Positions 49,375 to 52,037 of a stretch of DNA of 64,000 bases are shown here, in pieces. Each line of letters starts with the position of its first letter. The stretch's first letter is position 1. The position numbers and the translations under genes are program-made. The notes below the pieces were generated by a model. It worked only from the letters and a program-made list of their open reading frames with translations. It ran no database searches and was not told the origin of the DNA. The DNA is from Auanema rhodensis (Eukaryota; Animalia; Nematoda). The stretch spans positions 5,704,001 through 5,768,000 of the forward strand of contig OZ059895.1 of NCBI GenBank assembly GCA_964057225.1, read 5' to 3'.

Positions 49375-49952
49375 GCTCCATATTATAGATTATAGAAGAA
49401 ATTTATTAGGGGTTAGTAGTATATTATAGTATATATTATGTTTGTCTGTTTGTTTTTTTGCAAATTATGTCTTGCCTGATCTAATAACCATGCATTTTTC
49501 TTCTGGTATCTCCTGTTAAAAATGAGCTCATGAGGATCAGCCTTTCTTTTTAAAATTAAAAAAAAACAATATTGTCATGCCATCTATTTCTGTAAAAAAA
49601 GGAGTACAATCAGAATCAAAACACAAATCTGTATTGTCTGTGTTTTTATTATAATAATAATGTGATATAGAATTCATATAATTAGCTATACACTTGCCAA
49701 TTATGAGATAGAGACTTAATAAAGTTTTATCGATTACACAATTATAATTATATTCTAATAATTTAAAAGAAATTTAGAAAATCGTACTGTCTTGATCTGA
49801 TGATTTTTTAATCACCCAGAAGACCATGATTTAAATATCTTCAATGAAATATGAGTTTGGAAGTGTTTTGTGCTTCAAACTCAACCGAAATACGGAAAAA
49901 AGAATATACATTTTCCAAATAATCATCTATCTGCCTACCTTAAAGAATTTAA

Positions 49953-50027
49953 AACCATCGATGAAGACAGAAAGATGACGAGTCATAACACTAGTTGATG
50001 ATACCGAGGCATTTGTCTGAGTTGGTT
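49953..50027 (+). ncRNA. U15/SNORD15-like C/D box snoRNA, copy 1
   Basis: Terminal stem AACCA/TGGTT; C box TCGATGA; D' guide AGATGACGAG followed by CATA; C' box TTGATGA; D guide CGAGGCATTTG followed by CTGA. Both guides are complementary to LSU rRNA CAAAUGCCUCGUCAUCU. Confidence 0.9.
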
Positions 50028-50319
50028 CTCTTTCCTCAACCTAACCAAGTTTTTGCTTATAAGCTCTCCTATTTGGATTTTAATGATTTTGCTTAGAAAC
50101 TTTATTCGAATGATTTGAATGGTTTTGCTTAGAAGCTCTGTTCGTTTGGCTTGAATCACGTTAAAAATATTTCTAGAAAAGCTCGAAAGACCGAAGTTCG
50201 GATCCCTTCAATGAAATATGAGTTTGGAAGTGTTTTGTGCTTCAAACTCAACCGAAATACGGAAAAAAGAATATACATTTTCCAAATAATCATCTATCTG
50301 CCTACCTTAAAGAATTTAA

Positions 50320-50394
50320 AACCATCGATGAAGACAGAAAGATGACGAGTCATAACACTAGTTGATGATACCGAGGCATTTGTCTGAGTTGGTT
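50320..50394 (+). ncRNA. U15/SNORD15-like C/D box snoRNA, copy 2
   Basis: Identical to copy 1. Confidence 0.9.
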
Positions 50395-50686
50395 CTCTTT
50401 CCTCAACCTAACCAAGTTTTTGCTTATAAGCTCTCCTATTTGGATTTTAATGATTTTGCTTAGAAACTTTATTCGAATGATTTGAATGGTTTTGCTTAGA
50501 AGCTCTGTTCGTTTGGCTTGAATCACGTTAAAAATATTTCTAGAAAAGCTCGAAAGACCGAAGTTCGGATCCCTTCAATGAAATATGAGTTTGGAAGTGT
50601 TTTGTGCTTCAAACTCAACCGAAATACGGAAAAAAGAATATACATTTTCCAAATAATCATCTATCTGCCTACCTTAAAGAATTTAA

Positions 50687-50761
50687 AACCATCGATGAAG
50701 ACAGAAAGATGACGAGTCATAACACTAGTTGATGATACCGAGGCATTTGTCTGAGTTGGTT
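50687..50761 (+). ncRNA. U15/SNORD15-like C/D box snoRNA, copy 3
   Basis: Identical to copy 1. Confidence 0.9.
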
Positions 50762-51052
50762 CTCTTTCCTCAACCTAACCAAGTTTTTGCTTATAAGCTC
50801 TCCTATTTGGATTTTAATGATTTTGCTTAGAAACTTTATTCGAATGATTTGAATGGTTTTGCTTAGAAGCTCTGTTCGTTTGGCTTGAATCACGTTAAAA
50901 ACATTTCTAGAAAAGCTCGGAAGACCGAGGTTCGGATCCCTTCAATGAAATATGAGTTTGGAAGTGTTTTGTGCTTCAACTCAACCGAAATACGGAAAAA
51001 AGAATATACATTTTCCAAATAATCATCTATCTGCCTACCTTAAAGAATTTAA

Positions 51053-51127
51053 AACCATCGATGAAGACAGAAAGATGACGAGTCATAACACTAGTTGATG
51101 ATACCGAGGCATTTGTCTGAGTTGGTT
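51053..51127 (+). ncRNA. U15/SNORD15-like C/D box snoRNA, copy 4
   Basis: Identical to copy 1. Confidence 0.9.
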
Positions 51128-51418
51128 CTCTTTCCTCAACCTAACCAAGTTTTTGCTTATAAGCTCTCCTATTTGGATTTTAATGATTTTGCTTAGAAAC
51201 TTTATTCGAATGATTTGAATGGTTTTGCTTAGAAGCTCTGTTCGTTTGGCTTGAATCACGTTAAAAACATTTCTAGAAAAGCTCGGAAGACCGAGGTTCG
51301 GATCCCTTCAATGAAATATGAGTTTGGAAGTGTTTTGTGCTTCAACTCAACCGAAATACGGAAAAAAGAATATACATTTTCCAAATAATCATCTATCTGC
51401 CTACCTTAAAGAATTTAA

Positions 51419-51493
51419 AACCATCGATGAAGACAGAAAGATGACGAGTCATAACACTAGTTGATGATACCGAGGCATTTGTCTGAGTTGGTT
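51419..51493 (+). ncRNA. U15/SNORD15-like C/D box snoRNA, copy 5
   Basis: Identical to copy 1. Confidence 0.9.
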
Positions 51494-51648
51494 CTCTTTC
51501 CTCAACCTAAACAAGTTTTTGCTTATAAGATCTGCTATTTTAATGAAAAATTTCGAGAGACTCCTTCTTAGCGAATTTTTCTAAAATCGGATAGAAGAAA
51601 TAGAAACTTAGTTTTCGTTGAATGAAAATTCTTCGGCCCATACTCTTG

Positions 51649-51810
51649 TAAGGGACGCGCGAACGCGTCCCCAAACGCAAAAATTTAGCTGTTGGCGAAT
51701 CTCAACTCGAGATTGCCATACAGGTCAGCCCAATCTAAAGTGCAATGATCAGGCCTCTTCGTAGGGAGTCCGCCTTGTTGATCGCGGACAACCCCCAGCC
51801 AGGTAAGTTT
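51649..51810 (-). ncRNA. U1 spliceosomal snRNA
   Basis: Minus strand begins AAACTTACCTGGCTGGGGG. It has stem-loop I loop GATCAACAAG, U1A site ATTGCAC, Sm site AATTTTTG and the 3' GC-rich stem-loop GGGACGCGTTCGCGCGTCCC. Confidence 0.97.
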
Positions 51811-51843
51811 AATGGTAGACTCACTGCTTGGGCATACTAATTT

Positions 51844-51872
51844 CATTGCCGTATCTGTTATGGGTGCGGCAA
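51844..51872 (-). promoter_or_regulatory. Putative snRNA proximal sequence element (PSE)
   Basis: GCCGCACCC...ACGGCAATG at about -62 to -35 from the U1 start; position and loose sequence resemble the nematode snRNA PSE. Confidence 0.55.
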
Positions 51873-52037
51873 CAGAAAATTTCTAAATAAATTTTATTTT
51901 TTTCTTCTTTCTCTCTTTGAAACTTAAACATAACTTTCATTTAACTTTCATAACTTTTATTTAGTATTTAAAACACTTTACATTTTATCACAGTTTTTAT
52001 AAGATATTAAAAATATATTAAAATGGTATCAGTTAGT

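What the first reader, a model, noticed from the sequence alone, without database searches (positions are those of the whole stretch)
49839..51529. Apparent satellite is a tandem array of five identical U15/SNORD15-like snoRNA genes
Seen in sequence: each 367/366-bp unit contains ACCATCGATGAAGACAGAAAGATGACGAGTCATAACACTAGTTGATGATACCGAGGCATTTGTCTGAGTTGGT, with C, D', C' and D boxes and a terminal stem. Established: vertebrate SNORD15 begins UCGAUGAAGA..GAUGACGAGU and ends GAGGCAUUUGUCUGA. By the +5 rule the two guides point to the LSU rRNA positions equivalent to yeast Am2281 and Gm2288, within CAAAUGCCUCGUCAUC. Inference: a snoRNA that is intronic in vertebrates is here intergenic and recently amplified five-fold. 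It is either a set of independent transcription units or a polycistron, and repeat masking would hide it from annotation.
Basis: partly seen in the sequence, partly recalled or inferred. Interest (0 to 1): 0.85.

Follow-up and report, generated by a model that had tools for sequence, protein, structure and literature searches.

The report
Tandem worm U15 snoRNA genes
The 367-base 'satellite' is five head-to-tail copies of the roundworm version of a known ribosomal-RNA methylation guide (U15), each with its own promoter-like box; the array is ordinary for this genome, but the RNA seems to carry an extra front end that can grip the ribosomal RNA right beside its target.

Summary
Observation confirmed: 4.6 units of 367/366 bp (49839-51540) hold five identical box C/D cores. 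Their guides pair with eukaryotic LSU rRNA at yeast-equivalent Am2281 and Gm2288, the U15/snoR75 target pair. No Rfam family reaches its gathering score. The best hit is C. elegans ceN23-1 (full length, 32.9 of 40 bits), not SNORD15 (22 of 75). ceN23-1 is a TMG-capped, C/D-protein-dependent RNA. Each unit has a PSE-like box in register with that of the adjacent U1 gene, which favours five independent Pol II genes over a polycistron. The genome is an Auanema nematode. The syntenic site in Auanema sp. JU1783 lacks both array and U1, so this is probably a recent ~2.25-kb insertion. Added here: a predicted 20-nt 5' leader whose CUACCUUAA pairs with LSU 2268-2276, one base from the D-guide duplex. 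It is shared with ceN23-1 and absent from 77 non-nematode relatives: a probable accessory guide in an unusual place. The D' box is degenerate (CAUA). The scan has noted other snoRNA arrays and one other capped, rRNA-pairing leader elsewhere in this genome, but not this RNA.

The parts
49839..51540 (+). Tandem array, 367/366-bp unit, 4.6 copies
49874..49895 (+). PSE/UM1-like promoter element, copy 1; repeated in every unit (ends 50262, 50629, 50995, 51361)
   Evidence: 12/22 identity to the U1 upstream element in exact register, reached by 0.14% of background positions; function inferred
49934..50026 (+). Predicted capped snoRNA, copy 1 (leader + core); start inferred, about +/-1 nt; 3' end not mapped
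   Evidence: full-length alignment to Rfam ceN23-1; PSE spacing
49935..49943 (+). Leader element CUACCUUAA, complementary to LSU 2268-2276 (yeast numbering): candidate accessory guide
   Evidence: 9-bp match, chance 0.3-0.4%; shared with the ceN23-1 5' end; predicted unpaired
49954..50026 (+). Box C/D core, copy 1: C 49958-64, D' guide 49973-82 (Gm2288-equivalent), D' 49984-87, C' 49995-50001, D guide 50005-15 (Am2281-equivalent), D 50017-20
50301..50393 (+). Predicted snoRNA, copy 2 (identical)
50668..50760 (+). Predicted snoRNA, copy 3 (identical)
51034..51126 (+). Predicted snoRNA, copy 4 (identical)
51400..51492 (+). Predicted snoRNA, copy 5 (identical); its unit is cut off at about 51540
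50051..50205 (+). Spacer of unit 1: three degenerate 36-bp subrepeats and a B-box-like 11-mer at 50195-50205; no structure above shuffles
51650..51810 (-). U1 snRNA gene, convergent with the array, part of the same insertion
   Evidence: Rfam RF00003 113.9 bits; absent from L076
51849..51870 (-). PSE-like element of the U1 gene (-60 to -39)
49740..51985 (.). Approximate extent of DNA absent from the syntenic site of Auanema sp. JU1783 (between hexokinase and peptide:N-glycanase 3' ends)

Best explanation
Five complete, probably independently transcribed genes for the nematode orthologue of U15/snoR75 (C. elegans ceN23-1). Shown: array, boxes, guide complementarity, promoter-like element, empty site in a congener. 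Inferred: each PSE recruits Pol II as at the neighbouring U1 gene; transcription starts near 49934; the roughly 93-nt RNA is TMG-capped, binds the C/D core proteins and guides 2'-O-methylation of the LSU A equivalent to yeast A2281 (D guide, likely) and the G equivalent to G2288 (D' guide, less sure because D' is CAUA). The two guides overlap on the rRNA (2285-2288), so they would act in turn. The capped leader most likely docks on LSU 2268-2276 and extends the D-guide duplex across one unpaired base, as an accessory guide (about 55%). The gene arrived at this site together with a U1 gene after the split from JU1783 and was amplified by unequal exchange; amplification is more likely neutral repeat turnover (about 65%) than selection for dosage.
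For: Array and identical cores. Guides 11 and 10 bp on Rfam-confirmed eukaryotic LSU. Same two-guide layout in 77 distinct relatives from other eukaryotes. Full-length ceN23-1 alignment, E 5.5e-5. CeN23-1 is TMG-capped (PMC2200864) and depends on C/D proteins (PMC2442092). PSE-driven capped snoRNAs are known in C. elegans (PMC2527325). PSE register puts the start at the base where ceN23-1's 5' end aligns. Leader match chance 0.3-0.4%, duplex -11.2 kcal/mol. Accessory pairing raises methylation by snR75 4-5 fold and matters for snR13 at 2280/2281 (PMC3116282, PMC5389607). Empty syntenic site. Two spacer types in an AABB pattern.
Against: No family reaches its Rfam gathering score. The PSE call rests on one U1 gene and 12/22 identity. 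D' = CAUA occurs in none of the 77 relatives, though CGUA and CUUA do, and the DdR15 and ceN23-1 consensuses show CAUA and CCUA. Leader conservation rests on one outside source (Rfam consensus of Caenorhabditis), with no compensatory change possible because the rRNA site is invariant. The target was read from non-nematode LSU; Auanema's own 26S was not available.
Confidence: 0.8

Rival explanations
1. The leader match is not used for rRNA pairing; the conserved CCUACCUUA serves transcription start, cap hypermethylation or protein binding, or is a U1-like 5' end captured with the promoter.
For: It lies at the predicted start site; it resembles the U1 5' end (6 of 7 with CUUACCU); only one outside lineage was seen.
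Against: Conservation with ceN23-1 is confined to the rRNA-complementary block, and the linker differs; the target abuts the D-guide target; the U1 likeness is 3 nt out of register with the PSE; the worm RNA lacks the internal UCCAUU accessory element that 46 of 77 relatives carry, which fits a replacement.
Confidence: 0.4
2. One polycistronic precursor (or read-through from hexokinase) is processed to five 73-nt uncapped cores.
For: Head-to-tail, same strand as hexokinase; terminal stem present; plant relatives occur in such clusters.
Against: Every unit has its own PSE-like element; the orthologue is capped; the hexokinase poly(A) signal at about 49719 is conserved in JU1783.
Confidence: 0.08
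3. The copy number is inflated by the assembly; there are fewer real copies.
For: Copies 1 and 2 are identical over 367 bp; no read check was possible.
Against: Units fall into two spacer types with linked differences, so at least three genes are needed; the published A. rhodense assembly uses PacBio HiFi with contig N50 16 Mb (10.64898/2026.08.27.747507), if this window comes from it (inferred).
Confidence: 0.05
4. Pol III transcription from a decayed tRNA-like (UM2) leader in the spacer.
For: B-box-like GGTTCGGATCC at the end of each spacer; UM2 snoRNAs are common in nematodes.
Against: It lies about 100 nt above the leader with two T4 runs in between (49866, 49911); copy 1 lacks it; no tRNA found; two copies carry a mismatch in it; the orthologue is capped.
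Confidence: 0.04
5. The array is a silent, transposed duplicate; the working gene sits elsewhere in the genome.
For: The locus is young, so an older parent locus must have existed; sequence identity among young copies does not show selection.
Against: All boxes, guides, leader and promoter-like element are intact; all seven differences between copies fall outside the RNA, though 93 of 367 bases with seven changes is weak evidence.
Confidence: 0.12

Closest known systems
C. elegans CeN23-1 (Rfam RF01623, filed as 'sRNA')
   Same: Full-length alignment including the CCUACCUUA 5' end, CGAUGA-type C box, both guides, CNUA-type D' box. TMG-capped and C/D-protein dependent in C. elegans.
   Different: 32.9 bits against a cut-off of 40; shorter middle, longer leader linker; five tandem copies here. 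No paper that I could search names it as the U15 orthologue or mentions its leader.
Vertebrate U15/SNORD15 (RF00067), plant snoR75 (RF02539), Dictyostelium DdR15 (RF01565)
   Same: Same guide sequences and LSU targets; SNOR75 28.6 bits over the whole model. Two or three local copies are common among relatives: 15 of 120 loci.
   Different: Core 73 nt against 146 for SNORD15; not intronic; no internal UCCAUU element; copies here are identical while relatives' copies differ; 5' leader present.
Extra base-pairing (accessory guide) elements of yeast snR13/snR75 and human U15 (PMC3116282, PMC5389607)
   Same: A short conserved block complementary to rRNA next to the methylation target, at the same helix 69-71 region.
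   Different: Described elements lie inside the C-D core (between D' and C', in the second guide, or in a spacer). Here the block lies upstream of the terminal stem, in a leader that only a capped, self-transcribed snoRNA keeps. From memory, unverified: snR13's own accessory guide reads the same rRNA bases.
Tandem small-RNA gene arrays of Auanema rhodense (U2, 5S, tRNA; 10.64898/2026.08.27.747507)
   Same: Small RNA gene as the unit of a 167-504 bp tandem repeat.
   Different: This array is tiny (1.7 kb) and lies in gene-dense DNA, so it is probably kept in the soma (inferred); the preprint mentions no snoRNA.

Membership tests
Box C/D snoRNA | C box (RUGAUGA) near the 5' end and D box (CUGA) near the 3' end able to form a kink-turn | tested here: met
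   UCGAUGA 49958-64 keeps GAUGA; CUGA 50017-20; same variant in the ceN23-1 consensus
Box C/D snoRNA | Terminal stem | tested here: met
   ACCA/UGGU plus a C-G pair
Box C/D snoRNA | Internal C'/D' motif | tested here: inconclusive
   C' UUGAUGA good; D' CAUA degenerate, not seen in 77 relatives; divergent C'/D' motifs can be active
Box C/D snoRNA | Guide of 10 nt or more ending beside D or D' | tested here: met
   11 bp and 10 bp on eukaryotic LSU
Box C/D snoRNA | Expressed, fibrillarin-bound, directs methylation | not testable with these tools
U15/snoR75 target family | D guide for the A2281-equivalent and D' guide for the G2288-equivalent in one RNA | tested here: met
   numbering anchored on snR75 = 2288 and snR13 = 2280/2281, sequence context from my knowledge
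Rfam SNORD15 (RF00067) | Score at or above gathering (75 bits) over the 146-nt model | tested here: not met
   22 bits, model 116-141 only
Rfam SNORD15 (RF00067) | Intronic, processed from a host pre-mRNA | tested here: not met
   lies between two convergent gene ends
Rfam ceN23-1 (RF01623) | Score at or above gathering (40 bits) | tested here: not met
   32.9 bits, E 5.5e-5, model 1-100 of 100; works like it, formal membership not reached
Rfam ceN23-1 (RF01623) | 5' leader CCUACCUUA ahead of the terminal stem | tested here: met
Nematode PSE/UM1 Pol II small-RNA gene | Two-part PSE at the snRNA distance from the start | tested here: met
   in register with U1, background 0.0009-0.004; one reference gene only
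Nematode PSE/UM1 Pol II small-RNA gene | TMG cap on the transcript | not testable with these tools
   shown only for C. elegans CeN23-1
Nematode UM2 (tRNA-like, Pol III) snoRNA gene | A and B boxes directly upstream with no oligo-T before the snoRNA | tested here: not met
Accessory-guide snoRNA | Conserved block complementary to rRNA adjacent to the target | tested here: met
   conservation seen against one outside lineage
Accessory-guide snoRNA | Mutating the block lowers methylation | not testable with these tools
   needs a bench test

The most novel reading that the evidence does not exclude
Nematodes moved the accessory guide of U15 out of the C/D core into a capped 5' leader, and capped leaders that clamp the rRNA beside the target are a recurring design of their self-transcribed snoRNAs (an unchecked note of this scan, s1-401435, describes a second case on 18S). 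This would give a function to the 5' extensions of several long-unclassified TMG-capped C. elegans RNAs, and the leader-plus-guide duplex would border the NSUN-5 m5C site.
Probability: 0.4. Interest if true: 0.55.

Novelty: new variant of a known kind. Interest (0 to 1): 0.36.

Why it matters
The array itself matters little: it is one more small-RNA gene that repeat masking and Rfam cut-offs hide. Two things are of use. It links the orphan C. elegans RNA CeN23-1 to U15 and to two conserved methylations near helices 69-71 of the large subunit. And it predicts an accessory guide outside the C/D core, which can be tested with one small edit in C. elegans and a methylation read-out. It also adds a dated case of small-RNA gene movement and amplification between Auanema species.

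Tried and rejected
Rfam at gathering: only U1 in the window. Protein-coding or tRNA reading of the unit: no ORF of 90 aa or more, no tRNA. Second structured RNA in the spacer: folding no better than shuffles. Terminal inverted repeats or a clear target-site duplication around the insertion: none convincing. More nematode orthologues: nematode-tuned pattern found nothing in metagenomes or viral contigs; the broad pattern gave 120 loci, none with the leader. Hexokinase neighbourhoods of Diploscapter, Mesorhabditis and Cylicocyclus hold no U15 or U1 but are not syntenic, so they say little about polarity. Papers on C. elegans U15, on its 26S 2'-O-methyl map and on 5' accessory guides: none found; Deng 2006 and Zemann 2006 were not held. 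Among the rRNA-bearing contigs, those from human-gut-associated assemblies were not read, in case they were human; none was taken for human.

Full report
Observation. The array is real in the sequence: 49839-51540, period 367, 4.6 copies, 99% matches. Five cores start at 49954, 50321, 50688, 51054 and 51420. The 93 bases from 49934 to 50026 are identical in all copies. The units differ outside them: a 1-bp deletion in copies 4 and 5, three substitutions in the spacers of copies 3 and 4, and three in the cut-off fifth unit. Read from spacer to next gene, the order is A, A, B, B. That is what duplication, divergence and unequal exchange leave, and it needs at least three real genes. No other copy lies in the window.

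Identity. Only U1 (51650-51810, minus strand) reaches an Rfam gathering score. With E-values, the unit hits ceN23-1 over the whole model (32.9 bits, cut-off 40, E 5.5e-5), plant SNOR75 (28.6 of 50) and the last 26 bases of SNORD15 (22 of 75). I fetched eukaryotic LSU rRNA from contaminant contigs (Rfam LSU_rRNA_eukarya); the target region was the same in ten of twelve and differed only outside the three pairing sites in two. The D guide forms 11 pairs with 2278-2288 and the D' guide 10 pairs with 2285-2294 in yeast numbering; the fifth base rule gives A2281 and G2288. In yeast these belong to snR13 and snR75 (PMC5389607, PMC3116282); placing the numbers on the sequence rests on my own knowledge. 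A broad pattern found 77 distinct two-guide relatives in other eukaryotes. So this works like U15/snoR75, and its nearest described relative is CeN23-1, which in C. elegans is TMG-capped (PMC2200864) and falls on depletion of C/D proteins (PMC2442092). It is not a formal member of RF00067. The D' box is CAUA, seen in none of the 77 but matched by the DdR15 and ceN23-1 consensuses, so the G2288 methylation is less certain than the A2281 one.

Organism and age. A hexokinase exon upstream is 92% identical to Auanema sp. JU1783. In JU1783 the same three genes stand in the same order (hexokinase, peptide:N-glycanase, polymerase epsilon), but the gap between the first two is short and holds neither the snoRNA nor U1. 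About 2.25 kb (49740-51985) is specific to this genome. Insertion is the simpler reading; outgroups were not syntenic.

Transcription. The 22 bases at -60 to -39 of the U1 gene match the unit at 12 positions, including ATACGG, when the start is set at 49934; 0.14% of background positions do as well, and neighbouring registers mostly score 3-6, with 11 at a two-base shift. The same base is where the 5' end of ceN23-1 aligns, an independent anchor. PSE/UM1-driven capped snoRNAs are known in C. elegans (11 loci; PMC2527325). The shared pattern occurs six times in the window, five units and U1, but it was drawn from these sequences, so only the register test counts. A B-box-like 11-mer ends each spacer, yet it is about 100 bases away, separated by two T4 runs and absent before copy 1; I reject Pol III. 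Five Pol II genes is the best reading. It is inferred, not shown.

The leader. The predicted RNA has 20 bases ahead of the terminal stem, predicted unpaired. Bases 49935-43 pair perfectly with LSU 2268-2276, leaving only C2277 between this duplex and the D-guide duplex. A 9-base match from such a leader to the 96-base rRNA neighbourhood arises in 0.39% of shuffles and 0.33% of genomic 20-mers; the duplex is -11.2 kcal/mol. The ceN23-1 consensus keeps CCUACCUUA at its 5' end while the linker differs. None of the 77 relatives has CTACCTT upstream, while 46 carry an internal UCCAUU block complementary to about 2311-2319 that the worm RNA lacks. Extra pairing beside a target is a known aid to methylation, 4-5 fold for snR75 and needed for snR13 at 2281, but the described blocks lie inside the core. 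The rRNA strand leaves the D-guide duplex at the D-box end, where the leader attaches through a 10-base linker, so simultaneous pairing looks feasible (inference). I put the accessory-guide role at about 55%.

Why five copies. Local duplicates of this family are common: 15 of 120 loci hold two or three, all diverged. The A. rhodense preprint reports tandem U2, 5S and tRNA arrays (10.64898/2026.08.27.747507), and unchecked notes of this scan list arrays of U3, CeN53-like, H/ACA and U1 genes. The array therefore looks like ordinary small-RNA gene turnover in a repeat-prone genome. Nothing here shows selection for dosage.

Limits. Auanema's own 26S was not available. No contig was taken for human; human-gut-associated rRNA contigs were left unread.

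Verdict. The array is a known kind of gene in a layout common in this genome. The part worth following is the conserved rRNA-pairing 5' leader and the link between CeN23-1 and U15. New variant of a known kind; interest 0.36.

Noticed in passing
window 51650-51870 (-): Intact U1 snRNA gene with PSE-like element, 110 bp from the array's end and also absent from the JU1783 syntenic site; the two Pol II small-RNA genes seem to have arrived together or at the same hotspot.
   Followed up: partly
window 49980-49987 and 49989-49997: Two further rRNA complementarities inside the core: GAGUCAUA, overlapping D', matches helix 69 (2258-2265; same letters in the DdR15 consensus), and CACUAGUUG matches 2294-2302 with two G-U pairs; the ceN23-1 consensus has CACUAA just ahead of its D' guide instead.
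   Followed up: partly
L078, L080, L085, L100 (metagenome contigs of 19-20% GC): U15-like relatives with ATAGTTA or ATAGTTACT about 12-19 nt upstream of the C box, complementary to helix 69 (2252-2260): possibly an independent upstream accessory block, or chance in AT-rich DNA or a splice-site look-alike.
   Followed up: no
window 50195-50205 and equivalents: B-box-like 11-mer preceded in copies 3-4 by a perfect 5-bp hairpin (CTCGG/CCGAG) that is broken in copies 1-2; perhaps a decayed tRNA-derived or mobile-element piece.
   Followed up: partly
window 49760-49801: Weak Rfam match to plant snoR10 (21.8 bits, E 2.1) ending in CTGA just upstream of the array, inside the inserted DNA; probably chance.
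   Followed up: no
L001-L075: At least 75 contigs in bacterial and archaeal reference genomes carry eukaryotic 28S rRNA sequence, i.e. contamination; several Streptomyces-group assemblies share a contig of the same length (7682 bp).
   Followed up: no
window 49935-49943: From memory, the rRNA bases that the leader reads are also the insertion site of R2 retrotransposons; no link to this locus was seen.
   Followed up: no
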